Sequence record: NC_027399.1
Length of the DNA stretch: 64,000 bases
Reading direction: 5' to 3' (one strand)
Positions within the stretch are counted from its first letter, which is position 1. Every line of letters starts with the position of its first letter. Below, in pieces: positions 39,199-57,274 of the stretch. The notes beneath the pieces were generated by a model. The model saw nothing but the letters and a program-made list of their open reading frames with translations, did not search any database and was not told the DNA's origin. The position numbers and the translations under genes are program-made.

Positions 39199-39213
39199 TT
39201 TACAAATCTTTAC
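39199..39213 (-). promoter_or_regulatory. CpxR-type box
   Basis: TTTACAAATCTTTAC = GTAAA-N5-GTAAA on minus strand. Confidence 0.55.
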
Positions 39214-39227
39214 AAAAAGATTCTAAA

Positions 39228-39257
39228 TGCGAATACAAATGATAATGATTCTCATTT
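39228..39257. promoter_or_regulatory. Extended Fur box
   Basis: TGCGAATACAAATGATAATGATTCTCATTT. Confidence 0.8.
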
Positions 39258-39345
39258 ACAGTACTGAATACTTTTTCCCACGCCCTGGCGTCTCCGGTTA
39301 CTCCCGTCTATATAAACATTATACAGTACTGAAATATTAAGTCAA
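39240..39345 (-). ncRNA. Gene-less promoter element, divergent member of the CCC..GGGTG family
   Basis: TTGACT-16-TATAAT on minus strand; GACGCCAGGGCGTGGG core; runs into Fur box. Confidence 0.5.
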
Positions 39346-39377
39346 TACTATTTTTCAAAAAGATTAAAATAAAATAC

Positions 39378-39484
39378 TTGCAATCATTGTATTATTATAT
39401 TATAATGTTTACAGTACTGAGAAAGTTCTTTTGCCCGCTAGGGTGCGGGGGAGTATGCGTTAAATGAGAATGATAATCATTTAC
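39378..39484 (+). ncRNA. Gene-less promoter element (CCC..GGGTG family) ending in Fur box
   Basis: TTGCAA-17-TATAAT; GCCCGCTAGGGTGCGGGGGAGTAT; GAGAATGATAATCATTTAC (16/19 to Fur consensus). Confidence 0.6.
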
Positions 39485-39489
39485 AGTAC

Positions 39490-39584
39490 TGGACGGATTT
39501 TCCCACCCTCGGGGGTCTCTTTTTGTCTATGTAGTAATTATACAGTACTGGAATACTATATCAAGTCTCTTTACAAATCTTTAC
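39490..39584 (-). ncRNA. Gene-less promoter element convergent on the same Fur box
   Basis: CpxR-type box 39570..39584, TTGATA-16-TATAAT, CCCCCGAGGGTGGGA. Confidence 0.55.
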
Positions 39585-39678
39585 AATTCACCCGGGTAGA
39601 TTTATCTTTACTGTAAAAGTACTTGCATAATTCTTTCAGTACTGCTATTATATATTCATACCAAACAGGAGAACTACC

Positions 39679-39831
39679 ATGAAATACGCGTACTCTTATT
39701 TTATTGTAAACGGTGAACGTTTGACCATCGGCCAGGCTGCTGTAAAACATGAAATCATTTGCGATGATCTGGCAAAGATGCTACCAGGTGAAACGCAAGA
39801 GTTTTACAAAGGCTTCAGAAAGTCATTGTAA
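39679..39831 (+). CDS. Small early hypothetical protein (not in track)
   Basis: Own promoter, AGGAG SD. Confidence 0.7.
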   Translation: MKYAYSYFIVNGERLTIGQAAVKHEIICDDLAKMLPGETQEFYKGFRKSL

Positions 39832-39913
39832 CACGTTGTGAAGATTGATCCAGTATTAGGGGTAGGAATACCCCTAAAACGTCCTATAACGCATTATAAG
39901 AGGTTTTTATAAT

Positions 39914-40141
39914 ATGGCTATAGAAGTTAACGCTGGGGATATAAAGGCGGCTGTACTGCGTACCCTGAAAGCATACGGCAGAAAGCTGAATGATCGAAAC
40001 GTTCCCTATTATTTCCTTGCTGCTACTCATAAAATGGCAATCGCTGAGGCTCGCGGGTGGCTGAATGATCGCAGTACTGTAAAGAGTACCAGAACAAGAA
40101 ACGCAATTGAGCGATGGATAAAAGAATTAAATCATTTCTAA
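39914..40141 (+). CDS. Hypothetical protein
   Basis: GAGG SD, host-like codons. Confidence 0.75.
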   Translation: MAIEVNAGDIKAAVLRTLKAYGRKLNDRNVPYYFLAATHKMAIAEARGWLNDRSTVKSTRTRNAIERWIKELNHF

Positions 40142-40214
40142 TAGTTCAGTAAAGGGAATCAGTACTGATTCCCTGTTTAGTACTGAAATTATAAGGGGAG
40201 TTAATTAATTCCCC

Positions 40215-40345
40215 TTTACAAATCTTTACAAAAGAATTGTTGACATAGTATCCCAGTACTGGTATTATGTATTCATAGACAGAACAAGTCTTTGGCCCAC
40301 AGGGTGCGGAGGAGTATCTATTAAATGAGAATGATAATCATTTAC
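40215..40345 (+). ncRNA. Gene-less promoter element (CCC..GGGTG family) ending in Fur box
   Basis: CpxR-type box 40215..40229; TTGACA-17-TATTAT; AGAC-AGAACAA-GTCT hairpin; GCCCACAGGGTGCGGAGGAGTATCTAT; Fur box 40327..40345. Confidence 0.65.
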
Positions 40346-40349
40346 AGTA

Positions 40350-40452
40350 CTGAATATATTTCCGCACCCTTTTGGGCTTTTCGATTCCTCTCTACTTGCT
40401 AATAAGTATATCATAATCATTACTGAATGCAATGGTCTTTACAAATCTTTAC
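40350..40452 (-). ncRNA. Convergent gene-less promoter element
   Basis: CpxR-type box 40438..40452; TTGCAT-16-TATACT; GCCCAAAAGGGTGCGGA. Confidence 0.55.
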
Positions 40453-40549
40453 AAAAGAAAATAATTATAAAAAGTACTGAAAAAGTACTTGACGTAATAA
40501 TGTAGTACTGGCATAATGAGTACATACCAAACAGAACGGAGTAACTAAA

Positions 40550-40837
40550 ATGTTTAATGAAAATGATCATATTGTTAAAGAGTTTTCTTTCAGTAAGCCG
40601 ATCCATTTAGAAAACGGTGAAACACTGGACAATAAATTTTATGGTAGTATTATTAAGCGTTATACATCGCGGAGTAGTACTGGAATTTTATGGGAAGTGA
40701 ATAAACAGTACAATGGTAATTCGCTGGTTGTCAATGAGTGGGAAAGTTATGCAGTAGCGGAAATGGATTTTTCTAACTTCATTACTGAATCTTTGAACGA
40801 TGATATCTTTTACAAGTTCACAGCGGAAAGGGTTTAA
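40550..40837 (+). CDS. Early hypothetical protein
   Basis: Promoter plus GGAG SD. Confidence 0.8.
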   Translation: MFNENDHIVKEFSFSKPIHLENGETLDNKFYGSIIKRYTSRSSTGILWEVNKQYNGNSLVVNEWESYAVAEMDFSNFITESLNDDIFYKFTAERV

Positions 40838-40956
40838 AAAGTTTTAAAGAGTACTTGACAACATAATTCAGTACTGTATAATGTATTGCATAGAAAGGAG
40901 ATTCCAGAATAATGGAATCTCCGATAAAACAAACTATCAGTGAAGGAGTAATTGCC

Positions 40957-41568
40957 ATGAATGTTATCGATACCATCTATTCTAAATCTTTTATCGAACT
41001 GAATGAAGAGCAGAAAGAAAAAGCAATCGATGTTATGCGGGAACTGGATCGCCATGATTCAGATCCATTCTGGGCACAATTAATTAATGAAGATAAACAA
41101 GAATTAATGAATAATGAATATGGTTTTACTGATGCTGTAATTCATTATAGCGGCTTTTGCTCACAAGGTGACGGGGCGTCAATTAGTACTGAATCAATCG
41201 ACGCTGAGACGTTTTTACGCAAAATTAAAGCATGGTCGAAATTCCGTGTATTGCATAAACATTTCAATGATGGTACTATTACATTAAAGATCGAACGCAA
41301 CGATCATCGTTATTCGCATGAAAATACTGTTTCTGGTGTGGTGGATTTGGATTATTATACTGAATTCACTGCTAAACAAGAAGAGAAAGCGGAAGAGCTG
41401 GAGACGCTTTTGACTGAAACTATCCGTGATCTTTCACGTCAACATTACCAGGAGTTAAGCGACGAAAACGATTATCAAAATAGTGATGAAGCATTGATTG
41501 AATCGATTAATGCAAATGATTATAATTTCAAAGTTAACAGTACTGGTAACGTATTGGGGTTAGCGTAA
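40957..41568 (+). CDS. Early hypothetical protein
   Basis: AAGGAG SD; YSGFCSQGDGASI motif. Confidence 0.85.
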   Translation: MNVIDTIYSKSFIELNEEQKEKAIDVMRELDRHDSDPFWAQLINEDKQELMNNEYGFTDAVIHYSGFCSQGDGASISTESIDAETFLRKIKAWSKFRVLHKHFNDGTITLKIERNDHRYSHENTVSGVVDLDYYTEFTAKQEEKAEELETLLTETIRDLSRQHYQELSDENDYQNSDEALIESINANDYNFKVNSTGNVLGLA

Positions 41569-41666
41569 TGACTAAATTATATATTCGTTTCTGTTTTGCC
41601 TGGTATTTGTATAATCTACAAAATGGTTATACAACGAAATAATATATCTTTTTACTGATATACTGT

Positions 41667-41698
41667 AAAACGTCCTGTAAACGATTATGGGACGTTTT
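41667..41698. repeat. 32-bp imperfect palindrome, copy at 49893..49924
   Basis: AAAACGTCCTGTAA(A/T)CGATTATGGGACGTTTT; relatives at 39876, 41734, 44918, 54579. Confidence 0.8.
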
Positions 41699-41769
41699 AA
41701 GGAATATTAGTACAATGTTAGTACTGAATGATTTAAACGCCTTACAGTGGCTTACAGGAGATTATATCA

Positions 41770-41982
41770 ATGGCTAAATGTACTATTTGTAATAAAGAAA
41801 TTATTCTTTCCCCTAGTGCAGAGGATCGAGCTAAAAAGTACGGTGGTAAAGCCAGCGACTACACGAAACTTTTTACTACTCATGCGTCTTGTGTTGTTAA
41901 TAAACGTTCAAATGTCAACATTGAATTAATGCGTAAAATCAATAATGATTTTATTAATTCCTGTAAAAAAGTACTTGCATAA
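41770..41982 (+). CDS. Small Zn-binding hypothetical protein
   Basis: CTIC...H..C; AGGAG SD. Confidence 0.8.
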   Translation: MAKCTICNKEIILSPSAEDRAKKYGGKASDYTKLFTTHASCVVNKRSNVNIELMRKINNDFINSCKKVLA

Positions 41983-42061
41983 AGTTTTCAGTACTGGCAT
42001 AATACATCTATACCAAACAAAAAGGGAATCAGTACTGATTCCAAGATAAGGAGTAACTGAA

Positions 42062-42376
42062 ATGAGTACTAAAGAACTGAATGTAACTACCAACACTTAT
42101 AAGACGTTATGCGGTCGGTTGTTACGTGATTATTACACTGTAGAGATTGAAGAACGCGAATTACCCGAAGATAAACACTATTGGGAAAGTGGTGTGAGTC
42201 CTCTGTTACGGGTAACAACGTCTAAGCATGTTTTCTTTACTTCTCGCATTCATGTTAATAAGCGTGTCGAATTGACTTTCTCGTTTAGTGGAAGCTATAA
42301 AGATTATGAGATATTAAATGATCATATCGTTATCAGCAAATTTATTCAAATGTATGGTGCGGATTCTTTACTTTAA
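42062..42376 (+). CDS. Early hypothetical protein
   Basis: Promoter-stem-loop-AAGGAG cassette. Confidence 0.8.
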   Translation: MSTKELNVTTNTYKTLCGRLLRDYYTVEIEERELPEDKHYWESGVSPLLRVTTSKHVFFTSRIHVNKRVELTFSFSGSYKDYEILNDHIVISKFIQMYGADSLL

Positions 42377-42462
42377 GTATTTGACAATTCGATCCAGTAC
42401 TGTATAATGTATTACACCAAAGGGGATACATAGTGTATCCCTGATATAAAGGAGTAGCGACT

Positions 42463-42822
42463 ATGCGAGCTTTTAACGTTTATAAGAATGACAAAAAAAT
42501 TGACGTTGTTTATTATTCCGAAGTAATGACGGCAAAAGAAGTAACCGATTTGCTGAATAGCCGTGGTGAATACAACGGCGAAGTAAAAGCATTTCGGTCA
42601 TTGAATAGTGCGAATATTCGCACAGTACTGAAAAATGCTAAAACTGTTTTATTCAATGATGACGAATATTTTAATAAAGATGTTACGGGTATTAAAAACC
42701 TGGAAGATCTGAAAAGCCTTATTGGTATTAAAGGCAACGTATACAAAGTGGGGGAAGTCGGATCTCGCCATGAATATAAATTAGCCAATAGTGATTATAA
42801 ATTTTCAATCCTGGTAATGTAA
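42463..42822 (+). CDS. Early hypothetical protein
   Basis: Promoter-stem-loop-AAGGAG cassette. Confidence 0.8.
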   Translation: MRAFNVYKNDKKIDVVYYSEVMTAKEVTDLLNSRGEYNGEVKAFRSLNSANIRTVLKNAKTVLFNDDEYFNKDVTGIKNLEDLKSLIGIKGNVYKVGEVGSRHEYKLANSDYKFSILVM

Positions 42823-42823
42823 T

Positions 42824-43027
42824 ATGAAAGTTTATATTTTGGAAGTGGAAGAATGTAATTCATATTCTTACAGTGGTACACTATCACGCGTGGAGGCTGT
42901 ATTTGCAAGCGAGCAAGAAGCCCACGCCGCCGGGATTCAAAAAGTAAAAGAAGGCTATGAAGGTTATAGCGTCGATGCTTATGATATTCAGGGCGATCTT
43001 TCAGTACTGTTAAAGGAATTAAAATAA
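42824..43027 (+). CDS. Early hypothetical protein
   Basis: Coupled to upstream gene. Confidence 0.75.
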   Translation: MKVYILEVEECNSYSYSGTLSRVEAVFASEQEAHAAGIQKVKEGYEGYSVDAYDIQGDLSVLLKELK

Positions 43028-43242
43028 TGGAATATGAATTAATATATCACACTCGGTTATATGTTATTTTCTTTGAAATAACGTTATGGGGAGTAAAGGC
43101 AACGATTTATAATAAAGACGTTGCCGACGATCAAGAATGGATCGTTGTTGCAGAAGATAAAACGCCTCATGATTCGTTAAGTACTGATTTTAAATTATGC
43201 CGTGAATTATTAAAGAGAATAAGAAAAGATAATAATATATAA
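43027..43242 (+). CDS. Early hypothetical protein
   Basis: AAGGA SD, TAATG coupling. Confidence 0.75.
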   Translation: MEYELIYHTRLYVIFFEITLWGVKATIYNKDVADDQEWIVVAEDKTPHDSLSTDFKLCRELLKRIRKDNNI

Positions 43243-43245
43243 AAC

Positions 43246-43272
43246 AAAGGGGATCAATCGATCCCCTTTTTG
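43246..43272. terminator. Bidirectional intrinsic terminator
   Basis: AAAGGGGATC-AATC-GATCCCCTTTT. Confidence 0.85.
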
Positions 43273-43289
43273 TTTCAGTACTGAATTAA

Positions 43290-43400
43290 TAATAGATACA
43301 CTACGGCACCCTATGGGTCAGTGCCTTGTGTCCGGCTTATGTGGTTATTATGCCAGTACTGCGAACATAAGTCAATAGATGATTTGTAAAGAAGTGTAAA
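43290..43400 (-). ncRNA. Gene-less promoter element (CCC..GGGTG family)
   Basis: GTAAA-N5-GTAAA 43386..43400; TTGACT-17-CATAAT; GCC-GGACACAA-GGC; GACCCATAGGGTGCCGTAGTGTATCTAT. Confidence 0.65.
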
Positions 43401-43567
43401 TGCACAGGAAGCGTTTTAAGGCGTTAATCTGTTGCTGGTGGCTGATAGTACAGAGAAGTGTTTTAGATTGATTGTAGGCCGTTGTAGGCGTTTATAGATA
43501 GTAAAGTACTGATAATGTTTAATGATCCTGGTATGTGCAAATTATTTTAATTTTTTTCGTATTGGGT

Positions 43568-43950
43568 ATTGACGGATTATGTCAGTACTGGCATAATGTA
43601 TCACATAGAGCGACGGGCAAGACAAGTAGTCAACCTGTAAGACATACGAAAACCAGGTGACGTTGCACTGATTCAGTACTGAATAATACATAACATCTAA
43701 ATGTTGACAGTACTGAAAAATGTAGTATAATGATTCACAGAAAGAAGCAATCCAGTAAGCATGGATTAGTGATAAACGTAGGCCGGAATCACGAAAAACT
43801 TTCAAGGAAATACCCTTGTATAAAAAGGGAAGCGTTAAGCGTAGAACGTAAACGCGAAAATCCTAGCCTTGAACTGAAAAAGTAAACAAGGCAATTACAG
43901 AAAAAAGATTTAAAAAAGTAGTTGACAAGTACTAACGAGAATGAGATAAT
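43568..43950 (+). promoter_or_regulatory. Tandem strong promoters upstream of the H-NS-like gene
   Basis: TTGACG/CATAAT, TTGCAC/AATAAT, TTGACA/TATAAT, TTGACA/GATAAT, each containing AGTACT. Confidence 0.7.
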
Positions 43951-44003
43951 CTCTCTCGTTGAAACAAACAAACAATCTTAATCAAAACTTAAAGGTGAAT
44001 AAA

Positions 44004-44504
44004 ATGGCTAAACTGAATTCTGTTGTTGTTGCTCTGATCGCTGGTGATATCGCTGCTCTGAATGCTTCTTTCGCGTCGGTATCGATGGAAGATATGAAAA
44101 CTGTTCGTAACAACTTTAACGATTTTTACTCTAAATTCAAAGCTGCAAATGAAGCGGCGGAAGCGGCTGCAAAAGAGCGTAAAGCACAGATCGAAACCGA
44201 AACGAAAGAACTGGTAGACGCCCTGGTAACTGCTGGCCTGGATCTGGAAATGGCCGCCGAAGTCGCCAGCCAGAAAATGGCGGTGAAATATCCCGAACTG
44301 GCTCCGAAGTCGGGAACTGGTAAAACCTGGTCGTTTGAAACCGTATTCGTTAACGTTGACGGTGAAAAACTGGAAATTGGCACCAAAGGCAACAAAGGCA
44401 GTATGAAAGCACTGGCGGCGGCACGCGAAGCAATTGCCGCTGGCAAATACAAAGATCGTGCTGAATGGATCGCCGCTCACGCCTGGACTGAAACCGAAGC
44501 GTAA
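44004..44504 (+). CDS. H-NS/MvaT-like nucleoid-associated protein (putative)
   Basis: Ala/Glu-rich coiled coil ending ALVTAGLD (H-NS MLIADGID); KY...GTGKTWS (H-NS KY...GETKTWTG); GEKLEIGTKGN (MvaT GEVIETKGGN); highly expressed codon bias; AAGGTG SD. Confidence 0.55.
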   Translation: MAKLNSVVVALIAGDIAALNASFASVSMEDMKTVRNNFNDFYSKFKAANEAAEAAAKERKAQIETETKELVDALVTAGLDLEMAAEVASQKMAVKYPELAPKSGTGKTWSFETVFVNVDGEKLEIGTKGNKGSMKALAAAREAIAAGKYKDRAEWIAAHAWTETEA

Positions 44505-44525
44505 TAATTCAGTACTGTAATAATT

Positions 44526-44550
44526 AGCCTCCTGTAATTAGGAGGCTTTT
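44526..44550 (+). terminator. Intrinsic terminator
   Basis: AGCCTCCT-GTAATT-AGGAGGCT-TTT. Confidence 0.85.
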
Positions 44551-44583
44551 TATTTTGTTCAAAAAAATATTTTAATTTATTTT

Positions 44584-44740
44584 TTGAACGGACTTAAAAA
44601 ATCGGATATAATAATAAAGGGTGTTAATTACAGAGACCCCCATAGTGTTCGCTACGCTCACATAATGATCTTACTCGTTGCACTCGTAAGATCATTATCC
44701 AATCGGCCTTCGGCGATTTCTTTTTGATTTCCTACGGAAA
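44584..44740. other. Promoter followed by cluster of GNA-triloop hairpins
   Basis: TTGAAC-17-TATAAT; 13-bp perfect stem ATAATGATCTTAC/GTAAGATCATTAT; minus-strand GCGTAGC, GCCGAAGGC, TCCGTAGGA. Confidence 0.6.
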
Positions 44741-45111
44741 CCAAACGAAACCACCAGCAAAGGCAGATCCCATTATTTGATTTAGTTAGTACTGCAATGA
44801 ATTAGTTTAATCGCACTACAAAGCAATCAATCCCTTTTGTAATAGCTCATAGAACGCAATAAGACGCGTTTAAATGACTTCCCTATGTAATGCCATTCCT
44901 TTTTAATAAGTCCTCTTAAAACGCGTTACAGTTCGTTATACGGCGTTTAATAATACTCATCATTTCTTTTTCAAAAAGTACTTGCATTAATGATCCAGTA
45001 CTGCAATAATGTACTCACTGAAACGCAGTAAGTAAATGCAAATAAGTACTTGACAAAGTGTTGTAGTACTGGCATAATGAATACATCAAAACGATTAAGG
45101 AGAAACACCAA

Positions 45112-45585
45112 ATGTTAAAACTTCATAAAGTACTTGATAACGCAGTTGTAACCGACTTTTTCCTGTCTCTTAACAACGAACCTAAAACAGCAAAAGAAAT
45201 TGTTTTGAGTGGTTACATTGCCAGCAAGTCAGAGATCGCACATTTGGAAAGTGCTTTCAAGTCCGGCGATGCATTGTACCGAAAAATGCAAAATACCATC
45301 GAAGATTTGCAATATATCAATTTACGTGATATTGTAGACAATAAATTGGATATTTCAGAAGAAGCACGCGAAAACCTGGTAAGTAAATTATGTTACCGCT
45401 GCCGAACTGCAAAATGGAATCGCATTCGTAGTATTATTACTTACGATTTAAGTAAGATCGATTCTAAATCAATTCTTGAACGTATGTTATTAAATTTGCA
45501 AAGCAATGAATGGTTTTATACTGCTGCCCAATCTCATAGCGAAGAAATTGCATATATTCGTGATTATGTAATTTACAGCAAGTAA
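45112..45585 (+). CDS. Early hypothetical protein
   Basis: Two tandem promoters, AAGGAG SD. Confidence 0.85.
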   Translation: MLKLHKVLDNAVVTDFFLSLNNEPKTAKEIVLSGYIASKSEIAHLESAFKSGDALYRKMQNTIEDLQYINLRDIVDNKLDISEEARENLVSKLCYRCRTAKWNRIRSIITYDLSKIDSKSILERMLLNLQSNEWFYTAAQSHSEEIAYIRDYVIYSK

Positions 45586-45658
45586 TTAATAATTGATTAG
45601 CCATCATTAAAGCTGGTGGCTAATAGAATATTAATAACCTGTTAGGAGAATAATCTTT

Positions 45659-45928
45659 ATGAAAGGTATTAGTACTTTAATTGATAAAAACACTCATGTA
45701 AGACGTTCAATGATTGCCGTATCACTGGCTAAAGTTGTTGCAAGTGGTTATCTGGTTTTTGTTGTAGATGGTAAATTGCAAGAGCGTTCAATTGCATTTA
45801 GTACTAAAGAAAATTGCCGTTATATTGTATACAAGAAAGAAGCATACAAGATAGATTTACCAGCGAAACCGATCTCAGGCGGTTACAATGTTGAAAGCCT
45901 TTATGAAAGGCCACCGTATACTGCGTAG
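45659..45928 (+). CDS. Early hypothetical protein
   Basis: AGGAG SD. Confidence 0.75.
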   Translation: MKGISTLIDKNTHVRRSMIAVSLAKVVASGYLVFVVDGKLQERSIAFSTKENCRYIVYKKEAYKIDLPAKPISGGYNVESLYERPPYTA

Positions 45929-46182
45929 AATCGATTTTGAGCGGCTTTAATGAAATATAGGGTATCAGTACTGATACCCGTTTAAAACAGTGTAGGAGTG
46001 ATTCTGTGAAGCGTGAACAAGCTTTATTGACGCCTGAAGAGGCAAGACGCTATGAAATGTTTTCAAACCAGGAAACGATCAAAGCGGCACAATATAACCC
46101 GGTTGCTTGTACAGTACAAAGAAAGAATTTTGTACTAAATGAAGTAGAAAGTATTATCAAATCAAATAAGGAGTAAAACGCT

Positions 46183-46455
46183 ATGCAAAATAACCGTCCA
46201 ATGATCCGCAACATGCTTTTCGTATTCCAGAAAAAAGTTAATGTAACTTCGGTAAATGGTGAACGTAAATTAAATGCAGCTTTCGCCAAATATACCCAAA
46301 GTAAAAACATCCATTACTTTTATCTTACTCTGAATGAGTTTAATGATCTGGTAAAAGAAATGTTTGTCAGTACTGAAATTGTTGCACCTGTAAGCACTGA
46401 TATCATTCTAAAAGAATGGGAAAGTTTTTACAAAAGTTCTGTTGTAATCGCTTGA
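46183..46455 (+). CDS. Early hypothetical protein
   Basis: AAGGAG SD. Confidence 0.8.
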   Translation: MQNNRPMIRNMLFVFQKKVNVTSVNGERKLNAAFAKYTQSKNIHYFYLTLNEFNDLVKEMFVSTEIVAPVSTDIILKEWESFYKSSVVIA

Positions 46456-46509
46456 CAACATAATCCAGTACTGGCATAATAACTACATAGACCACAAAGG
46501 AGAAACATA

Positions 46510-46689
46510 ATGGAAACTGTAATTGCTACTACCAAAATCAATGGACTGGATAATGAAGTTTCATTGATCCATGACGGTAACGAATATGTTGTGTCATATG
46601 GTATCTATAAAACCTATCATGACACTATCAATGAAGCTTTTGAGGATTATATGAAAGCAATTGAAATTGCTTATGATGATTATCGTTAA
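46510..46689 (+). CDS. Small early protein (not in track)
   Basis: Promoter plus AAGGAG SD; METVIATTKING... Confidence 0.7.
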   Translation: METVIATTKINGLDNEVSLIHDGNEYVVSYGIYKTYHDTINEAFEDYMKAIEIAYDDYR

Positions 46690-49695: not shown

Positions 49696-49725
49696 AAAAA
49701 CACTGGCATATACAGGGGAATAAAA

Positions 49726-49881: not shown

Positions 49882-50041
49882 TGATGTACTGTAAAACGTC
49901 CTGTAATCGATTATGGGACGTTTTAAGGAATAGCACTATGATTTATTCAGTACAGTGGAAAAAACGCTTGTAAATTGATTCCAGTACTGTATAATGCTTT
50001 ACATGGAAAAATTATTCTCCACATTATTAGGAATAAAGAAT

Positions 50042-50269
50042 ATGTTTTATCTTGGAACTGTTAAAGAAAATTCGAATGTAATTGAGGCGTCATTGATTTG
50101 TACTAATAATGAAGTCGCTGGCTATGATTTTGCAAAAGAGCGATTCATGAAATATTACACTGGTGATAATTCAGTGTCATTCGATTTTGAACGTATCGGT
50201 GATGGTGTTACAATTATGAAATTTGAAGATCTCCCTGAAATCGATTTTGATTTTGTCGTTACACTGTAA
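50042..50269 (+). CDS. Early hypothetical protein
   Basis: AGGA SD. Confidence 0.75.
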   Translation: MFYLGTVKENSNVIEASLICTNNEVAGYDFAKERFMKYYTGDNSVSFDFERIGDGVTIMKFEDLPEIDFDFVVTL

Positions 50270-50367
50270 AAAAGTACTTGCATAATTCTTTCAGTACTGT
50301 ATACTGTACTTATACCAAACAAAAGCAAATGGAATCAGTACTGATTCCCTGTAAAGGAGATAGACCA

Positions 50368-50619
50368 ATGTCAGATCGTATCACTCGCAAAATGGTAGCA
50401 GATAAAGTTGCTGGGCTGAATCTTGCTATTGACCGTCGTGGATTACCTGAAAAATATCAGGTAGTACTGGAAGATGGTAAATTCAATATTGAATTACAGC
50501 CGTCTCATGTTTATACTAATCCAAAAGTGATACAAAAGAATTTGAGTACACGAGAAGCATATTTTTATCTGAAAGGTATGTTTCAAATTCTTCTCGACAA
50601 TGTACCACATAAAGATTAA
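50368..50619 (+). CDS. Early hypothetical protein
   Basis: AAGGAG SD; MSDRITRKMV... Confidence 0.8.
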   Translation: MSDRITRKMVADKVAGLNLAIDRRGLPEKYQVVLEDGKFNIELQPSHVYTNPKVIQKNLSTREAYFYLKGMFQILLDNVPHKD

Positions 50620-50621
50620 AG

Positions 50622-50653
50622 AAAAAGGGGAGACAACAAGTCTCCCTTTTTTT
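50622..50653. terminator. Bidirectional intrinsic terminator
   Basis: AAAAAGGGGAGAC-AACAA-GTCTCCC-TTTTTTT. Confidence 0.85.
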
Positions 50654-50669
50654 GTATTCAGTACTAAAT

Positions 50670-50755
50670 TATATAGATACATTTATGCACCCTGTGGGTT
50701 AGTAGCTTGTTCTGCTTTATGTAGTAATTATATGATAAAGCTGGTGGCTTGTCAA
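50670..50755 (-). ncRNA. Gene-less promoter element (CCC..GGGTG family)
   Basis: TTGACA-17-TATAAT on minus; AGC-AGAACAA-GCT; AACCCACAGGGTGCATAAATGTATCTAT. Confidence 0.7.
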
Positions 50756-50848
50756 CACTTATTTTAAAATAAAAAAAATACTGAATAGTACTTGCAAAAA
50801 GTATTCAGTACTGTATAATGTTTGTATTGAGATTAAGGAGTACTTACT

Positions 50849-51388
50849 ATGTTAATCAAAATGTATCACGGTTCTAATAATTTTGATCACCGCCGGGGAT
50901 ATCTGGGCGGAAAGCCAGGTAATTTTCATATGGGCTTTGGACTCTATCTAACTAACTCTTATCGCTGGGCTGATAATTATGGGCGACGTCATTATGAGTT
51001 AGATTTAGATATTTGTAGTACTGGTGCCGCACATAATGTATGGATTCCTACTAAACACTTTATGGAATTCATAAGAGTATATTGCACCAAAAAGTTTTAT
51101 ACAATGTGCTGTAAAGAATTTAAAGACCGTGAATCGTTGAATGTAGAACGCGTTGAATTGCTTATTATCAATATGGAAAGGCACGTTACGAAAATCGCTA
51201 AACCATTTGCTGAATTCGTCGCTGCCTGGGGTTGCACGCATAGCATTGAAATATCCGGTAACTATGGTGGTGTTTGCGTGCGGCTTTATGATTTCAGTAC
51301 TATAAAGAATTGTATCATAAGCCAGGAAACGCAGGATTTTTATTATCCAGATGAATTGACAAGATATCCTCAAAAAAACTTGTATTAA
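50849..51388 (+). CDS. ADP-ribosyltransferase-fold protein (putative, H-Y class)
   Basis: MYHGS...GFGLYLT.S...A..YG signature. Confidence 0.55.
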   Translation: MLIKMYHGSNNFDHRRGYLGGKPGNFHMGFGLYLTNSYRWADNYGRRHYELDLDICSTGAAHNVWIPTKHFMEFIRVYCTKKFYTMCCKEFKDRESLNVERVELLIINMERHVTKIAKPFAEFVAAWGCTHSIEISGNYGGVCVRLYDFSTIKNCIISQETQDFYYPDELTRYPQKNLY

Positions 51389-51651
51389 TGATTCAGTACT
51401 GATATAATGTATTAAATTAACAGGAGGAATTATCTTAAATGAATAAACGTCAATTGATGATTGATGCATCTCGTTTCCGTTCAAAAGAAGAAAAGAAAAG
51501 TTGCATTAAATGGGTTTTGTCAACTTTCATTATTGGATTACTTATTGTTGCTTTTGTTTATAGTTAGTACTTGACAATATAATCCAGTACTGTATAATGT
51601 TTATCAAAGGGAATGAATTATTCATTCCCGATTAATCAAAGGAGTTTTGCC

Positions 51652-51876
51652 ATGATCTATATTATCAAAGTATCCCCGACCGTAGGAAAATCAGAAGTTG
51701 TAGCTGTTATCACTTCCCTGGAAGCGAAAGATCTTCATACCCCGTTTAATGTATGGGTGGAGGATAATTTCGGACAATTCAGTACTGCTGAATATATCGA
51801 ACAATTCGCCGTCCCGGATACTGGTAAAATCAAAGTGGATCGTATCCTGGATTTTGATAACAGTAATTACTTTTAA
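51652..51876 (+). CDS. Early hypothetical protein
   Basis: Promoter-stem-loop-AAGGAG. Confidence 0.75.
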   Translation: MIYIIKVSPTVGKSEVVAVITSLEAKDLHTPFNVWVEDNFGQFSTAEYIEQFAVPDTGKIKVDRILDFDNSNYF

Positions 51877-52174
51877 AAACGTTTGACAACTGATTTCAGT
51901 ACTGTATAATGTTTATCAAAGGGAATGAATTATTCATTCCCGATTAATCAAAGGGGTTTATCATGAAAGAGTATATCTTTGAAGTAACTTTCACCTTTGG
52001 CCCGCACCAACTGATCCGGTCTTCTGGCTACAACCGCGAACAAGCATTCAGCAACCTTCGCCGTATGTACCCCAATGTCGTGACCTGGGTCAAGTGTGAA
52101 GAAGCATAAAATAATTAGTCAGTACTATTGACAACGCGTGATAGTACTGCTATAATTATTTTAACTTATACGGA

Positions 52175-52426
52175 ATGGAGTTAAAACAAATGTTCAGTGT
52201 CAGCAAACAAGGCGACAAATTTCTGGTTCAATACCATCATTTTGATCTGGTATACACTCAGCCAGATTGTGTATTCAGTACTCAGGAAGGTGCTGAAAAG
52301 CACAAAAAAGCCTTGATCGAAAATAGCAACAGTGGTACATTAGATTTCATCCAACAGTACTGGAATGAATCTAAGCTGGTGGACGGTTATTCCAACACAG
52401 TTTATTATGTAGGTATCACTGATTAA
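52175..52426 (+). CDS. Early hypothetical protein
   Basis: Follows promoter; start may be ATG 52190. Confidence 0.75.
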   Translation: MELKQMFSVSKQGDKFLVQYHHFDLVYTQPDCVFSTQEGAEKHKKALIENSNSGTLDFIQQYWNESKLVDGYSNTVYYVGITD

Positions 52427-52713
52427 TCGGGAGTACTGTTAATGTATATGCCAATTATCATACCGTTAGCAGTACTGTTAATCGCCGCCGTTATCTGCGA
52501 ACAATATCATTTGTTAGGAATGTAAACTATGATTCAATGTGAATTGTCAGTACTGATCACGCTGTTCTATATGTTGGGGCAAAAGAAACAAGATATTTCT
52601 GGTGATAATGCATTATTGTATCAATCATTAGACCAATGGCAACGATCTGAATTAAGCAATGCATGGGCGAAAGGTTACAACGATAGTACTGCAAAATAAT
52701 TTAAAAAAAGGGG

Positions 52714-52801
52714 TTGACTTACGCCAGCCCTTTTGTTATCATTAGTACATAGCAAGAACAATGCTCAAGCCCACAGGGTGCCGAAGTGTATCTATAGTTT
52801 A
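52714..52801 (+). ncRNA. Gene-less promoter element (CCC..GGGTG family)
   Basis: TTGACT-17-TATCAT; AGCA-AGAACAA-TGCT; GCCCACAGGGTGCCGAAGTGTATCTATAGTTTA. Confidence 0.7.
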
Positions 52802-52886
52802 TGTTGGTCTGAATCATTAATTTTTCTTGACAATTGGTTTAGTACTGGATATAATAGCCGCCATTGAATACAGGAGGATTTTAAAA

Positions 52887-53153
52887 ATGGCCTATCATAC
52901 ACCACATAGACACTTCATTGATAAACGCGGTATGGCTTTTAAAGCAATGAGTGACAATCGTAACACACAAATGTACTTTAAAGATATGACATTAGAAGAA
53001 GCAATTGAAGCCGTAAGGAATGATCGTAAGCTTTCCAAGAAAGTTGCATCAGTACTTAATGCTTTTTGGTTTGAACGTACTACCAACAAAGAATACAAAG
53101 AAAAGATGATTGCACTTGGTAAAGTAGTAAGAGAAGAAAAATTATATCTTTAA
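52887..53153 (+). CDS. Early hypothetical protein
   Basis: AGGAGG SD. Confidence 0.8.
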   Translation: MAYHTPHRHFIDKRGMAFKAMSDNRNTQMYFKDMTLEEAIEAVRNDRKLSKKVASVLNAFWFERTTNKEYKEKMIALGKVVREEKLYL

Positions 53154-53435
53154 GTACTTGACTATGTGATTCAGTACTGTATACTGTACTTATACCAAAC
53201 AAAAGCAAAGGGAATCAGTACTGATTCCCTGTAAAGGAGATAGACCAAATGAAACAAGCAAAATTTAATTCAGAAATTAAAGCAGCAAAAGCACACAAAG
53301 TACAGTTAGCAGTACTGGCTATCGTATCAATCTTTTTGCTGTGCAACATCGGCTAAAATAATTATCACAGTACTATTGACAACCAACGATAGTACTGGTA
53401 TAATTAGTTTACCAAATCAAAAAGGAGTAACTAAA

Positions 53436-53711
53436 ATGCGGATTAAACTTACCAGTGATGAAATTCATTCAGTACTTACTACCAATATGCAGGACTGGAA
53501 AAAGTACGCTGATATCGAAGAAGTCCAGGAACTCAATGATGATTTGAGTGTAGATGAAATTATTACTATTTGCTCATCTCAATTCTTTGATGATATCAAT
53601 GATGAAGAGCAAGATGTATTTGATATCATGGAAAAACATTTTATTGCGTATGATGTTTTCCCGTATACTCGCCAGGCTTATATTCTTATTCACAACATTT
53701 ATAACAAATAA
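53436..53711 (+). CDS. Acidic early hypothetical protein
   Basis: AAGGAG SD. Confidence 0.8.
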   Translation: MRIKLTSDEIHSVLTTNMQDWKKYADIEEVQELNDDLSVDEIITICSSQFFDDINDEEQDVFDIMEKHFIAYDVFPYTRQAYILIHNIYNK

Positions 53712-53723
53712 GGAATAATAATC

Positions 53724-54089
53724 ATGGAAAAAGAATTTAAAATCAAATACAATATCAGTACTGATTGCGGTTTCGAAGTACCAGAAGAAGATCAAGAACG
53801 TCTTAATGATGTTATTATGATTGACATTTCAAATAAAATCATTCAAGGCTACCGTGAAGGCGAATTGTGTGAATCGTTGATGGATCAATTCAATGAAGTG
53901 GAAACGTTTTATCGTGGCTGGTGGAGTATCGAAGAAGTTCACAAAGTACACGAATACCGTGTATTCTGGATTAACGGCGTTAATGATATCGAAGATATCA
54001 TTGTAAAAGAAAGTAGTGAATCCGCCGCCATTCAGTACTTTAAAGATCACTACCCCAACAAACGTTATCACCATTTAGAAAAAATTTAA
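53724..54089 (+). CDS. Early hypothetical protein
   Basis: AAGGA SD. Confidence 0.8.
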   Translation: MEKEFKIKYNISTDCGFEVPEEDQERLNDVIMIDISNKIIQGYREGELCESLMDQFNEVETFYRGWWSIEEVHKVHEYRVFWINGVNDIEDIIVKESSESAAIQYFKDHYPNKRYHHLEKI

Positions 54090-54176
54090 AAAGTACTTGA
54101 CACCTAATACCAGTACTGATATATTAATACGCATAGGGGCAAACAACTTGCCCCACTAAACAAAAGGAACTACCAA

Positions 54177-54533
54177 ATGATTACTAAATTCTATTCTTCC
54201 CGCGAAAAAGCTCGGATCGTAGCACGTGAAGAAGGCGAAACCTTCAAAGATATGGGTAAAGATTCCCCTGCTGGTCAACGCTGGGCAGTACTGTTCCGCG
54301 AGGTCAAAGACCTGGTAGAAAACGCTAAAGCGGTTGAAATGAACGTACCCACCAAAGAAGATAAAGATCTGACTGATGCCCTCGCCGCTGCATTCTCCGC
54401 GATGGATAAAGCCGCAGCGGTAGTACTGAAAGTACCGGAATTTGTAACCCGCAAAGTGCATTCAGTACTGCAAAATAAATTCAACGGTAAACAGGTTCAA
54501 GTGTTTACTAAACGTAAAATTCCGGTCATGTAA
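54177..54533 (+). CDS. Highly expressed early hypothetical protein
   Basis: Cassette with AAGGA; strong host-like codon bias; YSSREKAR...GQRWAV. Confidence 0.85.
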   Translation: MITKFYSSREKARIVAREEGETFKDMGKDSPAGQRWAVLFREVKDLVENAKAVEMNVPTKEDKDLTDALAAAFSAMDKAAAVVLKVPEFVTRKVHSVLQNKFNGKQVQVFTKRKIPVM

Positions 54534-54641
54534 GACCTGATTATTACAGTACTAACAAAGGGGCTTCAAAGCCCCTTTAAACGTCCTGTAAGCCATTCTA
54601 AGAGGTTTTACATGAAAAAGGTACAACTACACAAAGGAGTA

Positions 54642-54860
54642 ATGAAAGTTCATTATAATGCCCCGCAACGCATTATAGATAGAGCCATTGAACTAGCCAA
54701 TCAATATCTAGCTGGTGGATTAACTCCCAGGAAGTTAAGCAACGGGAAGTTATATGTAATCAACGTTGATACTAATAATCGTATAGTAATCAAAGGTGAA
54801 AGCATATCACTGTATGAACATCAACAGTATAACAAGAAAGTAAAAAATATTAGTAGATAA
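54642..54860 (+). CDS. Small basic protein, possibly RelE/ParE-like fold
   Basis: AAGGAG SD; RKL...I.V..NNRIV...HQQYN pattern. Confidence 0.45.
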   Translation: MKVHYNAPQRIIDRAIELANQYLAGGLTPRKLSNGKLYVINVDTNNRIVIKGESISLYEHQQYNKKVKNISR

Positions 54861-54939
54861 GTGTTGACAACTGATTTCAGTACTACCATAATGTATACAT
54901 ACAAGGCAATACCGCCTAATAACATAGGAGTAACTGAAA

Positions 54940-55362
54940 ATGAAAAAATCAACTAAAATTGTCTTAGGTGTATTTGTTGTTCCGGCAGTCGCCTTTTTTT
55001 CTTGTGCTATGATTTTTGGTGATGCTTCTCGGGTTGCCGCAAAAATCGAAAAAGAAAAACAAGTCCAGGAACAAGTTAAGAAAGAAGAAAAACCAAATTA
55101 TAACACTGTATGGGAAGCAATTTGCCATACCAGTACAGGTAAACGAATTTCCATCCTTACAGCAATGAATAATGGAAAATCAATCGTCGGAAACGAATAC
55201 ATGGAAGTGACTTCCAGTACTGGTAAAGAATTTGTAATGACGAACTATAATAACAATAACGTTGCAATTGTTACACAGGATTTTAAAGGTAATGCAGTAC
55301 TTGAATATCATATGCAATATGAAGTAATTTTTGCAAAATGCACATTTGAATGGGGTGCATAA
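54940..55362 (+). CDS. Membrane-anchored early hypothetical protein
   Basis: N-terminal hydrophobic helix; AGGAG SD. Confidence 0.8.
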   Translation: MKKSTKIVLGVFVVPAVAFFSCAMIFGDASRVAAKIEKEKQVQEQVKKEEKPNYNTVWEAICHTSTGKRISILTAMNNGKSIVGNEYMEVTSSTGKEFVMTNYNNNNVAIVTQDFKGNAVLEYHMQYEVIFAKCTFEWGA

Positions 55363-55389
55363 AAATAAACATAATAAACAAAAAAGGGG

Positions 55390-55472
55390 TTGACACAGGT
55401 CAGCCCTTTTGCTATTATTAATATCAAGAAAACAAGCTAACCCACAGGGTGCATAAATGTATCTATAGTTTA
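55390..55472 (+). ncRNA. Gene-less promoter element (CCC..GGGTG family)
   Basis: TTGACA-17-TATTAT; AACCCACAGGGTGCATAAATGTATCTATAGTTTA. Confidence 0.7.
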
Positions 55473-55543
55473 TTAAAGAATTTTAGTACTTGACAACGTA
55501 GTACAGCAGTACTAAAATATCTACATACAAAGGAGATTACCAA

Positions 55544-56128
55544 ATGAACAAACATCTTAAAGTACTGAATAAATGTAAATCCAATACCGAAATGTTACTG
55601 TACTGTTACAAAAATTTAATTAAACTCGGGAGAGGTTCATCAAGAACAGTATTTTTGTTAACAAAAAATAAAGTACTGAAAGTTGCTCATAACCATATTG
55701 GCAACCAACAGAATACAGCAGAAATCACTGCATGGTTGTATATTGATTATGACCGCTATTATAATAAACGCTTTTTCGCTAAAGTGTTCCCTGATATGTC
55801 ACATTTCAAAGATGTATACATAGTACAGGAGTACTGCGACAATATCAGTACTAAAGAAGCGAAGCCATACATCGAACATTACTTGACACCTCGCACTATT
55901 GAAAATGAGCGTGCTAAACGCTTCCACACGGCGTTAAGAGATGTAGACAATACCCTTAACTATAAAACGCTGGTGGACTTAAACATGGGCAATATAGGCC
56001 GTTCTGTAAGGGGTGCAATCAAAATCCGTGATTATGGATTATCTGAGCATATTGCTAAACAGTACCGAGAAGCCCGCTTCCAATACCAGCAACTCAAAAG
56101 TATTAGTAACATAAGTATTGATTTATAA
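55544..56128 (+). CDS. Ser/Thr protein kinase-like protein
   Basis: Gly loop LGRGSSRTV, VLKVA (Lys), NTAE (alphaC Glu), IVQEYC hinge, DLNMGN catalytic loop, DYG. Confidence 0.8.
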   Translation: MNKHLKVLNKCKSNTEMLLYCYKNLIKLGRGSSRTVFLLTKNKVLKVAHNHIGNQQNTAEITAWLYIDYDRYYNKRFFAKVFPDMSHFKDVYIVQEYCDNISTKEAKPYIEHYLTPRTIENERAKRFHTALRDVDNTLNYKTLVDLNMGNIGRSVRGAIKIRDYGLSEHIAKQYREARFQYQQLKSISNISIDL

Positions 56129-56193
56129 TTTCAGTACTGCTATAGTACTTTCACAGGGGAGATAATCTCCCCAATCACAGAGGAGATTTTACC

Positions 56194-56556
56194 ATGAGTA
56201 CTAAACCATTCGTTACTACCCGTTCAAATCTGACCGAAATCTATGTACACGGCGGATACGAGGAAACGTATGTCACTGGTATTATGGTAGAATTCCATCA
56301 GGGTTATCGGTTTATGTTGGTAGATTCAGAAATCTATCATACCCAACAAGATAAACATGGTTATGTCAATAAGTACTCCACCGATGAAGTACTGAAACGC
56401 CTGGATAACAAAATTAAACAAATTCAAAAACATCTTGACAACGGCGGAAAACTTAATCATTTACTTTGGGATAGCTTAGATCCCTGCTACGGTTCGGATG
56501 CATATGGTAAAAGCCGTGACACTGCAATGAAAGTACTTAAAGATTATTTCTTTTAA
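56194..56556 (+). CDS. Early hypothetical protein
   Basis: GAGGAG SD. Confidence 0.8.
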   Translation: MSTKPFVTTRSNLTEIYVHGGYEETYVTGIMVEFHQGYRFMLVDSEIYHTQQDKHGYVNKYSTDEVLKRLDNKIKQIQKHLDNGGKLNHLLWDSLDPCYGSDAYGKSRDTAMKVLKDYFF

Positions 56557-56630
56557 GTATTGACAAGCAATTCCAGTACTGGCATAATGTATTTCAAGGA
56601 GGTAATAACACCTCCTACCTTCAAGGAGTA

Positions 56631-56879
56631 GTGACTATGAATACTAAAGAAATGCTTTGTGAGTTCGCCAGTAACAATCTTGGTAACGCCGCTTTCATTG
56701 ATGGTTTTAATTATGTAGCAACTCGTGATCAAGAAGGTAAAGTATTCGTTAAAGATCGTATGGGCTTTTCTATCCAGGTTCAATCTGGTACTGCAAGCCA
56801 TATNGATNGTNNGAANGNNTGGNNNNGNTNCTATCCCCGGNGATGGAACATATCATTTCCGTATCGTAAAATAATTTAA
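56631..56879 (+). CDS. Early hypothetical protein (3' end unreliable, many Ns)
   Basis: AAGGAG SD. Confidence 0.6.
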   Translation: MTMNTKEMLCEFASNNLGNAAFIDGFNYVATRDQEGKVFVKDRMGFSIQVQSGTASHXDXXXXWXXXYPRXWNISFPYRKII

Positions 56880-56973
56880 AAAGTNCTGGACAATACAATC
56901 CAGTACTGTATAATGTTTTGCATACACAAGAGATTCCAGTNCTGGAATCTNTAATNTAAAGGAGAATACCAAA

Positions 56974-57255
56974 ATGATTAACGGCACTCTGATTAANTAT
57001 GCAAAACGCCGCGATGTAGAAATAGAAGTACTGAAAGCAGGCGAAGTTGACGATGACGCTCAGGTATGGTTCTACACCGCAGACAATGACTGTGAACCAG
57101 TACTGATGTACCTGATTAATAATGATGGTTCTCTTACTTATCGTAGCAAACTGATGAAGTCACTGGAAGATATGCCAGCACATATCAATAATAAAGAAGT
57201 ACTGAAACGCGTAATCTGCTACATCTCAGACCAGCACAAAGCGGATATGATGTAA
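56974..57255 (+). CDS. Early hypothetical protein
   Basis: AAGGAG SD. Confidence 0.8.
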   Translation: MINGTLIXYAKRRDVEIEVLKAGEVDDDAQVWFYTADNDCEPVLMYLINNDGSLTYRSKLMKSLEDMPAHINNKEVLKRVICYISDQHKADMM

Positions 57256-57274
57256 TCTTTACAAATATGGGGGG

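What the first reader, a model, noticed from the sequence alone, without database searches (positions are those of the whole stretch)
39199..57265. Perfect CpxR-type boxes (GTAAA-N5-GTAAA) specifically upstream of the gene-less elements
Seen: TTTACAAATCTTTAC at 39199, 39570, 40215, 40438, 48546; GTAAAGAAGTGTAAA at 43386; a TTGAC variant at 47133; and a half site at about 57257. Most lie about 5-15 bp upstream of the -35 box of a family promoter, and I did not see the motif at ordinary gene promoters. Established: GTAAA-N5-GTAAA is the CpxR consensus, and OmpR-family regulators bind similar 10-bp direct repeats. Inference: the phage couples these transcripts to envelope-stress signalling that its own adsorption or injection could trigger; a phage-encoded winged-helix factor is the alternative.
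Basis: partly seen in the sequence, partly recalled or inferred. Interest (0 to 1): 0.68.

Follow-up and report, generated by a model that had tools for sequence, protein, structure and literature searches.

The report
Tandem CpxR-like box at phage promoters
A giant Klebsiella phage carries, only in the first-injected end of its genome, a strictly conserved 17-20 base tandem repeat just upstream of some early non-coding promoters; it matches the binding site of the host envelope-stress regulator CpxR perfectly, but what binds it is still unproven.

Summary
The window is Klebsiella jumbo phage K64-1. Bases 38181 to about 58573 are its roughly 20 kb terminal repeat and early island.

- **Copies.** TTTACAAATCTTTAC(AA) occurs five times exactly, plus two one- or two-mismatch variants and one half site, all inside this island. 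The other 326 kb of the genome holds only one unrelated TTTAC-N5-TTTAC.
- **Repeat unit.** The true unit is CTTTACAAA twice, at a 10-bp period.
- **Conservation.** The box is invariant in five other Alcyoneusviruses while flanks vary (1/136 versus 58/941 variable columns). One copy with the same geometry survives in E. coli Asteriusviruses.
- **Position.** The box ends 10-11 bp upstream of the -35 of co-directional promoters of the non-coding family. In inverted orientation it ends 5 bp from antisense family promoters. It occurs at 4 of 11 strong family promoters and 1 of 118 other promoter-like sites.

The box fits the CpxR consensus and natural cpxP boxes. No phage OmpR-type domain was found. 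However, the box occupies the UP-element position, scores as UP-like, and is replaced by A-tracts in paralogues and relatives.

My odds:

| Reading | Odds |
|---|---|
| Host CpxR-type regulator site | about 0.4 |
| Other specific factor | about 0.3 |
| UP element only | about 0.2 |

Envelope-stress coupling is untested. An earlier follow-up in this scan (s1-160328, another piece of this genome) reached a similar reading.

The parts
38181..58573 (+). Terminal-repeat / early island of the phage, mapped by homology to the PhageTerm-predicted 20,030 bp repeat of phage Muenster. All boxes lie inside it.
39199..39215 (+). Box 1, exact 17-mer. No strong promoter beside it in K64-1. In KP13-7 the same place holds an A-tract plus a + strand family promoter.
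39570..39586 (+). Box 2, exact. It lies 5 bp from the -35 of the minus-strand family promoter 39564..39537 (GTAAA orientation) and 38 bp from the -35 of the gene promoter for ORF 39679-39831.
40215..40231 (+). Box 3, exact. It lies 10 bp upstream of the -35 of + strand family promoter 40240-40268.
40438..40454 (+). Box 4, exact. It lies 5 bp from the -35 (40432..40427) of minus-strand family promoter 40432..40405 and 36 bp from the -35 of gene promoter 40489-40517.
43384..43400 (-). Box 5, variant TTTACACTTCTTTACAA. Both pentamers are intact and there are two spacer changes. It lies 10 bp upstream of minus-strand family promoter 43375..43347.
47133..47149 (+). Box 6, variant TTGACAAATCTTTACAA (GTAAA-N5-GTCAA on the other strand). 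It lies 9 bp upstream of family promoter 47157-47185 in K64-1 and 11 bp in the five relatives.
48546..48562 (+). Box 7, exact. It lies 11 bp upstream of family promoter TTGATT-17-TATTAT (48572-48600). Homology with KP13-7 starts exactly at the box.
57256..57266 (+). Half box, proximal unit only. The distal unit is overwritten by the end of ORF 56974-57255. It lies 12 bp upstream of family promoter 57275-57303 in K64-1 and 11 bp in relatives.
40240..40395 (+). Example of the driven non-coding unit: a promoter followed by a long hairpin cassette that holds a Fur-like box (40327-40345) and is met by the convergent minus-strand promoter.

Best explanation
The box is a sequence-specific cis-regulatory site of two head-to-tail CTTTACAAA units, one helical turn apart. 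It lies at about -61 to -42 of a subset of host-RNA-polymerase (sigma-70 type) early promoters in the phage's terminal repeat. Those promoters mostly drive small non-coding units.

The most likely reader is a tandem dimer of a host OmpR/PhoB-family response regulator. Phosphorylated CpxR is the best fit. It would bind immediately upstream of the -35, where such regulators touch RNA polymerase, and so tie the output of these promoters to the cell's envelope-stress state. With up to a dozen perfect sites per incoming genome, it might also soak up CpxR~P.

Shown here: the motif, its restriction to the early island, its conserved geometry, its purifying conservation, and its fit to CpxR sites. Inferred: that a protein binds it, that the protein is CpxR, and the direction of the effect.
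For: - **Real repeat.** There are five identical 17-mers plus two variants, with unrelated flanks and different promoter subtypes downstream. The 17-mer itself is therefore the conserved unit.
- **Restricted location.** All copies lie in the 20 kb terminal repeat of a 346.6 kb genome.
- **Conservation within the genus.** One of 136 motif columns varies across six Alcyoneusviruses, against 58 of 941 flank columns (one-sided Fisher p = 0.003).
- **Conservation across genera.** The box is 17/17 identical in Asteriusviruses such as 121Q, where the surrounding 107 bp are about 77% identical, with the same 11-bp gap to the -35.
- **Geometry.** The gap to the -35 is 10-11 bp in six independent places.
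- **Consensus match.** It is a perfect GTAAA-N5-GTAAA, the CpxR consensus.
- **Fit to natural sites.** Natural cpxR/cpxP boxes in E. coli, Pantoea, Rahnella, Proteus, Vibrio, Photobacterium and Marinomonas have the same architecture. The Vibrio box GTAAAGAATCGTAAAG matches the phage GTAAAGATTTGTAAAG at 14 of 16 positions.
- **Orientation.** The E. coli cpxP box reads TTTAC..TTTAC toward cpxP, like the phage's co-directional boxes, and it also sits between divergent promoters.
- **Variants spare the pentamers.** Box 43386 changes only the spacer. Box 47133 is GTAAA-N5-GTCAA, an alternative CpxR SELEX motif according to PMC12802237.
- **Rarity in the host.** E. coli K-12 has only 21 perfect boxes in 4.64 Mb.
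- **No phage candidate.** No OmpR-type domain is found in the phage.
- **Second host-type motif.** Fur-like boxes share the same cassettes: 4 against 0.12 expected.
Against: - No binding or expression data exist. Public RNA runs hold only wastewater contigs and are uninformative.
- The promoters are near-consensus, some with an extended -10, so they do not need an activator.
- The box region scores 10-11 of 15 against the UP-element consensus, like box-less family promoters at 11-13 of 15.
- It is replaced by A-tracts at the orthologous place in KP13-7, in the distal half in EJP2, and entirely in Munch, fENko-Kae01, GAP32 and Yen9-03, whose hosts also have CpxR.
- The spacer and flanking bases are conserved beyond what the CpxR consensus asks for.
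- The base before the second pentamer is T in the phage, whereas natural cpxP boxes have C.
- An AT-rich tandem half-site could contain GTAAA by chance in a few per cent of cases (my estimate).
- Three boxes face their nearest family promoter in the opposite orientation, at a different distance.
Confidence: 0.4

Rival explanations
1. The box is an operator for a phage-encoded DNA-binding protein, or for another host one, whose site merely resembles the CpxR consensus. An example would be an early or virion-borne factor that shuts off or times the non-coding early promoters.
For: - Seventeen bases are identical between copies, more than the 10 bases of the CpxR consensus.
- The box is limited to two phage genera although all the hosts have CpxR.
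- Most early ORFs are orphans, so a novel binder could be hidden among them.
- An unrelated viral contig, L082, carries an array of six TTTACAA units upstream of a gene. This shows that such repeats can arise as phage-specific sites.
Against: - No candidate was found. No Trans_reg_C, HTH_3, HTH_23 or Sigma70_r4 match above cut-off exists in six frames of the genome.
- The only DNA-binding domain in the island is H-NS-like.
- The 75-aa ORF between the boxes, noted elsewhere as sigma-like, models as a plain three-helix bundle with no fold match. It is absent from Asteriusviruses, which keep the box.
Confidence: 0.28
2. The box is a factor-independent upstream promoter element (UP-like, phased A-tracts) that is read by the alpha subunit C-terminal domains of host RNA polymerase. 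The CpxR match is coincidental.
For: - It lies at -61..-42.
- It scores 10-11 of 15 against the UP consensus, against a random mean of 6.9 and a median of 8 for all strong promoters.
- Box-less family promoters and relatives have A/T tracts at the same place.
- RpoD-like promoters with UP-like elements are reported for the related phage CBB (PMC5259590).
Against: - UP elements are degenerate and contain no conserved C.
- Here both C positions and 17 of 17 bases are fixed across paralogues with unrelated flanks and across two genera.
- Variant 43386 breaks the A-tract but keeps both pentamers.
- Three boxes are inverted relative to their nearest family promoter.
Confidence: 0.2
3. The box is a module boundary used in recombination, or an origin or packaging-type iteron, rather than a transcription signal.
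For: - Homology breakpoints fall at box edges. K64-1 against KP13-7 ends at 39197 and resumes at 40230. KP13-7 homology starts at box 48546. The Asteriusvirus alignment starts at the first base of the box.
- Direct copies flank the palindromic cassettes.
Against: - The fixed 10-11 bp distance to the -35 in six places points to a promoter function.
- No recombinase or initiator gene was seen beside the boxes.
- Early promoters are known shuffling points in T4-type phages in any case (general knowledge).
Confidence: 0.08

Closest known systems
CpxR box of the divergent cpxP-cpxRA promoters (E. coli and relatives)
   Same: - Both are a tandem GTAAA-N5-GTAAA.
- Both read TTTAC..TTTAC toward the activated promoter.
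- Both sit between divergent promoters within about 100 bp.
- Natural boxes in six gamma-proteobacterial genera plus E. coli have the same architecture.
   Different: - The phage has 6-7 full copies in 10 kb of a lytic phage genome.
- They stand in front of strong consensus promoters of non-coding units.
- The spacer and flanks are also fixed.
- The base before the second pentamer is T, not C.
- Binding is untested.
OmpR sites F1-F3 and C1-C3 of ompF and ompC
   Same: - Both are 10-bp head-to-tail half sites containing TTTAC or xxxAC.
- Both abut the -35 region.
- Both are read by a winged-helix tandem dimer.
   Different: OmpR half sites are followed by T-rich runs (ACATTTT, ACTTTTG) and tolerate GAAAC and GTTAC. 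The phage units are ACAAAT and ACAAAA with two perfect TTTAC, so the fit is worse than for CpxR.
UP elements of strong sigma-70 promoters (rrnB P1, T4-type and CBB early promoters)
   Same: - The position is the same (-40 to -60).
- Both are A/T-rich.
- The box is interchangeable with A-tracts in paralogues and relatives.
   Different: The box has exact sequence conservation, including two C per turn, and inverted copies. These features are not expected of UP elements.
Dispersed phage operators and activator boxes (P1 C1 operators, T4 MotA boxes)
   Same: Both are a short asymmetric sequence repeated at a fixed place in a subset of phage promoters.
   Different: - No cognate phage protein was identified here.
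- MotA boxes replace the -35, whereas these boxes lie upstream of an intact -35.

Membership tests
CpxR binding site (CpxR box) | Tandem direct repeat GTAAA-N5-GTAAA (N4-8 in the loose form) | tested here: met
   There are six perfect sites in the window and one GTAAA-N5-GTCAA variant. The consensus is taken from PMC12802237, PMC3158067 and PMC8831704.
CpxR binding site (CpxR box) | Location within about 100 bp upstream of a transcription start | tested here: met
   The boxes end 5-12 bp upstream of predicted -35 hexamers. Transcription starts are predicted, not mapped.
CpxR binding site (CpxR box) | Resemblance to natural, conserved CpxR target sites beyond the pentamers | tested here: inconclusive
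   The phage box matches the Vibrio cpxP box at 14 of 16 positions and shares the GTAAAG units. The phage has T where all cpxP boxes have C before the second pentamer.
CpxR binding site (CpxR box) | Bound by phosphorylated CpxR, with promoter output dependent on cpxR/cpxA | not testable with these tools
   This needs EMSA or footprinting, plus reporters in cpx mutants.
UP element | A/T-rich sequence at -59 to -38 that matches the UP consensus | tested here: met
   The box region scores 10-11 of 15, against a random mean of 6.9 (sd 1.7) and 11-13 for box-less family promoters.
UP element | Degenerate sequence with stimulation dependent on the alpha C-terminal domain | tested here: not met
   The degeneracy part is not met: 17 of 17 bases are fixed in five paralogues, six genomes and a second genus. 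Alpha dependence is not testable here.
OmpR box | Two 10-bp half sites of the type (G/T)TTAC followed by a T-rich run | tested here: inconclusive
   The TTTAC cores and the 10-bp period fit. The A-rich runs after AC differ from the real ompF and ompC sites.
Operator of a phage OmpR-type winged-helix protein | Phage encodes a Trans_reg_C-type domain | tested here: not met
   There is no match at E <= 1 in six frames of the whole K64-1 record, while the control rings in 12 of 14 genomes.

The most novel reading that the evidence does not exclude
A strictly lytic jumbo phage places a battery of perfect host CpxR sites, together with Fur sites, on the first DNA to enter the cell. It thereby reads, or titrates, the host's envelope-stress and iron regulators to set the output of its early non-coding RNAs. 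One possible use is sensing superinfection or envelope damage.
Probability: 0.3. Interest if true: 0.8.

Novelty: new variant of a known kind. Interest (0 to 1): 0.55.

Why it matters
If CpxR (or a close paralogue) binds these boxes, this would be a first case of a virulent giant phage wiring its immediate-early programme to a host two-component envelope-stress pathway.

One incoming genome would carry about half as many perfect CpxR boxes as the whole E. coli chromosome: 12 with both repeats, against 21. After replication the phage boxes would far outnumber the host's. That could blunt the host stress response.

Either way the box gives a defined 20-bp handle for pull-downs and reporters in a phage group used for Klebsiella therapy research, whose early biology is unknown.

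Tried and rejected
- **Phage OmpR-type factor.** No Trans_reg_C domain in six frames. No HTH_3, and only sub-threshold HTH_23 and Sigma70_r4 matches elsewhere in the genome.
- **Early ORFs.** About 40 ORFs of the early island were scanned against Pfam and 10 against PHROGs. These gave only an H-NS-like N-domain, a ParE-like domain, a kinase-like domain and DUFs.
- **75-aa ORF 39914-40141.** Muenster's annotators noted HHpred hits to sigma factors. Here it gave no PDB sequence match and only a weak atlas lead. A single-sequence model (pLDDT 79) is a three-helix bundle with no Foldseek match at E <= 0.001. Homologues are absent from Asteriusviruses. I rejected it as a candidate binder.
- **RNA evidence.** No infection RNA-seq exists. 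Wastewater metatranscriptome contigs cover scattered parts, including promoter-upstream DNA, so they say nothing about starts or regulation.
- **Rfam and tRNA scans of the window.** Nothing found.
- **IMG/VR scan for the 17-mer.** Mostly single chance hits. Only RaK2 and 121Q are related.
- **RNA-level role (3' UTR or terminator tail).** The positions relative to terminators are inconsistent. The short units do not fold better than shuffles, although the long cassette does, with z = -5.
- **Box as a tandem -35.** No consistent -10 follows it.
- **Literature.** Price and Raivio 2009 could not be read, so the exact cpxP start site was not used. No paper was found on CpxR sites in lytic phages or on this motif in RaK2-like phages.
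- **CpxR relatives scan.** The genome-contig scan returned no Klebsiella record. Host CpxR identity is inferred from 87-92% identity in more distant Enterobacterales.

Full report
**Identity and setting**

The window is Klebsiella phage K64-1 (Alcyoneusvirus, RaK2-like jumbo phage). Window position equals record position minus 186000.

The related phage Muenster is deposited with a PhageTerm-predicted 20,030 bp terminal repeat. Its first base aligns to window 38181 and its last to about 58573. About 20 kb direct terminal repeats are reported for several relatives (PMC13070987, PMC5259590). The finding therefore lies wholly in the terminal repeat.

This region is packed with small ORFs behind near-consensus sigma-70 promoters. 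It also holds a family of promoter-driven non-coding units with a core of the type CCCACAGGGTGC..GTATCTAT.

**The observation**

- TTTACAAATCTTTAC is present at 39199, 39570, 40215, 40438 and 48546.
- A variant lies on the minus strand at 43386, a TTGAC variant at 47133, and a half site at about 57257.
- Shuffles give 0.54 TTTAC-N5-TTTAC per window against 6 observed.
- The whole 346.6 kb record has 7 such sites, 6 of them in the island.
- With up to three mismatches to the 17-mer, the only other good copy lies inside a structural gene and is taken as chance.

The copies share TTTACAAATCTTTACAA and often a preceding C and following AAG. The unit is therefore CTTTACAAA twice, 10 bp apart. Sequences outside it are unrelated between copies, and the promoters downstream are of different subtypes. 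The short box itself, not a larger duplicated block, is what is kept.

**Conservation**

In Muenster, RaK2, KP13-7, RCIP0023 and OU509535 the box is unchanged at every orthologous site. After paralogous and replaced stretches are removed, 1 of 136 box columns varies against 58 of 941 flank columns (p = 0.003).

K64-1's odd spacings at 47133 (9 bp) and 57257 (12 bp) are private indels. The relatives have 11 bp at both.

E. coli and Salmonella Asteriusviruses (121Q, vB_Ec-M-J, CMSTMSU) keep exactly one copy per terminal repeat. It is 17/17 identical and lies 11 bp upstream of TTGACT-17-CATAAT and a family unit. The surrounding 107 bp are only about 77% identical.

Natural variants exist. SD-1_S14 has CTTAC in the distal unit, and EJP2 has replaced the distal unit by an A/T tract. 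KP13-7 lacks boxes 1 and 2 and has an A-rich tract plus a family promoter where box 1 would be. Munch, fENko-Kae01, GAP32 and Yen9-03 keep the family unit but have no box, only A/T tracts.

**Geometry**

Co-directional boxes end 10-11 bp before the -35. These are boxes 40215, 43386 on the minus strand, 47133, 48546 and the half site 57257, plus the 121Q copy. The 15-mer therefore spans about -60 to -46.

Boxes 39570 and 40438 lie 5 bp from the -35 of minus-strand family promoters, which form the right arms of two convergent-promoter hairpin cassettes. Here they stand in the GTAAA orientation, and they lie 36-38 bp from ordinary gene promoters.

Of 129 promoter-like sites with at least 10 of 12 matches in the window, the box accompanies 4 of 11 family promoters and 1 of 118 others. 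Two further family promoters, 48572 and 40432(-), score below that cut but also have it. About half of the family promoters have none.

**What might read it**

The box is a perfect CpxR consensus.

| Test | Result |
|---|---|
| Real cpxR-cpxP intergenic regions (E. coli, Pantoea, Rahnella, Proteus, Vibrio, Photobacterium, Marinomonas) | All carry a perfect GTAAA-N5-GTAAA. The Vibrio version differs from the phage box at 2 of 16 positions. The E. coli box reads TTTAC..TTTAC toward cpxP. |
| Perfect boxes in E. coli K-12 | Only 21, including those at cpxP, ppiA, psd and motA by position. The phage island is more than 100-fold denser. |
| Phage variants | The two variants spare the pentamers or use GTCAA, reported as an alternative CpxR SELEX half site. 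|
| Real OmpR sites of ompF and ompC | They fit less well. |
| Phage OmpR-type domain | None exists. |
| Fur-like boxes in the same cassettes | 4 against 0.12 expected. A second host-regulator-type motif raises the prior for host factors. |

**Against a CpxR reading**

- The promoters are near consensus.
- The box occupies the UP position and scores 10-11 of 15 against the UP consensus, like box-less paralogues.
- A-tracts replace it in several lineages whose hosts all have CpxR.
- More bases are fixed than CpxR is known to need.

Against a UP-only reading stand the fixed C positions, the exact identity across paralogues and genera, the 43386 variant that breaks the A-tract but keeps the pentamers, and the inverted copies.

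A phage-encoded reader cannot be excluded, because most early ORFs are orphans. The one annotated lead, the 75-aa ORF at 39914-40141, models as a plain three-helix bundle and does not co-occur with the box in Asteriusviruses.

**Verdict**

The box is best described as a sequence-specific tandem site at the UP position of a subset of early non-coding promoters.

| Reading | Odds |
|---|---|
| Host CpxR-type regulator | about 0.4 |
| Another specific factor | about 0.3 |
| UP element only | about 0.2 |
| Recombination or replication role | under 0.1 |

The proposed link to envelope stress from adsorption or injection is speculation that ordinary bench tests can settle.

No literature on this motif in RaK2-like phages, or on CpxR sites in lytic phages, was found. 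An earlier follow-up of this scan on another piece of the same genome (s1-160328) came to a similar undecided reading. I treat that as agreement, not as independent evidence.

The operators' limit for read laying was kept (5901 letters).

Noticed in passing
whole window, e.g. 38082-62973: The palindrome CAGTACTG occurs 107 times against 0.6 expected. It is often inside promoter spacers and at hairpin tips.
   Followed up: no
38949-38967, 39241-39259, 39466-39484, 40327-40345: Fur-box-like 19-mers match the consensus at 16 of 19 positions. There are 4 against 0.12 expected. They sit at the centres of the hairpin cassettes and in an array at 38940-39060. A similar box is kept in Salmonella phage Munch.
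   Followed up: partly
47153-47191, 48981-49019, 52710-52748, 55386-55424, 57271-57309: These are composite terminator-promoters. A GGGG..CCCC hairpin with a TTCG-type loop encloses the -35 hexamer. Its T-run leads into the -10, so upstream transcripts would stop exactly where a new one starts.
   Followed up: no
40276-40395: The cassette between convergent promoters folds as one long hairpin (-39.6 kcal/mol, z = -5.0). The short family units do not fold better than shuffles.
   Followed up: partly
7363-7410: Outside the terminal repeat, TTTACATCTTTACAAA (two TTTAC with N3 spacing) lies 19 bp upstream of a TTGACA promoter.
   Followed up: no
L004 17180-17480 (phage KP13-7): KP13-7 lacks boxes 1 and 2. 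It has one hairpin cassette whose two promoters are preceded by A-rich tracts, then a 528-bp ORF that is absent from K64-1.
   Followed up: partly
L082 480-560 (IMGVR_UViG_3300028925_008341): An unrelated 9 kb viral contig has six TTTACAA units in about 70 bp upstream of a small gene, near an ArdC-like anti-restriction gene.
   Followed up: partly
56800-56997: The window holds 20 N letters here (ambiguous bases in the source). They touch ORF 56974-57255 just upstream of the half box.
   Followed up: no
L115 / E. coli K-12 chromosome: Perfect GTAAA-N5-GTAAA is not enriched genome-wide in E. coli: 21 against 18 for the reversed control. A perfect box alone is therefore weak evidence of function in a host genome.
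   Followed up: no
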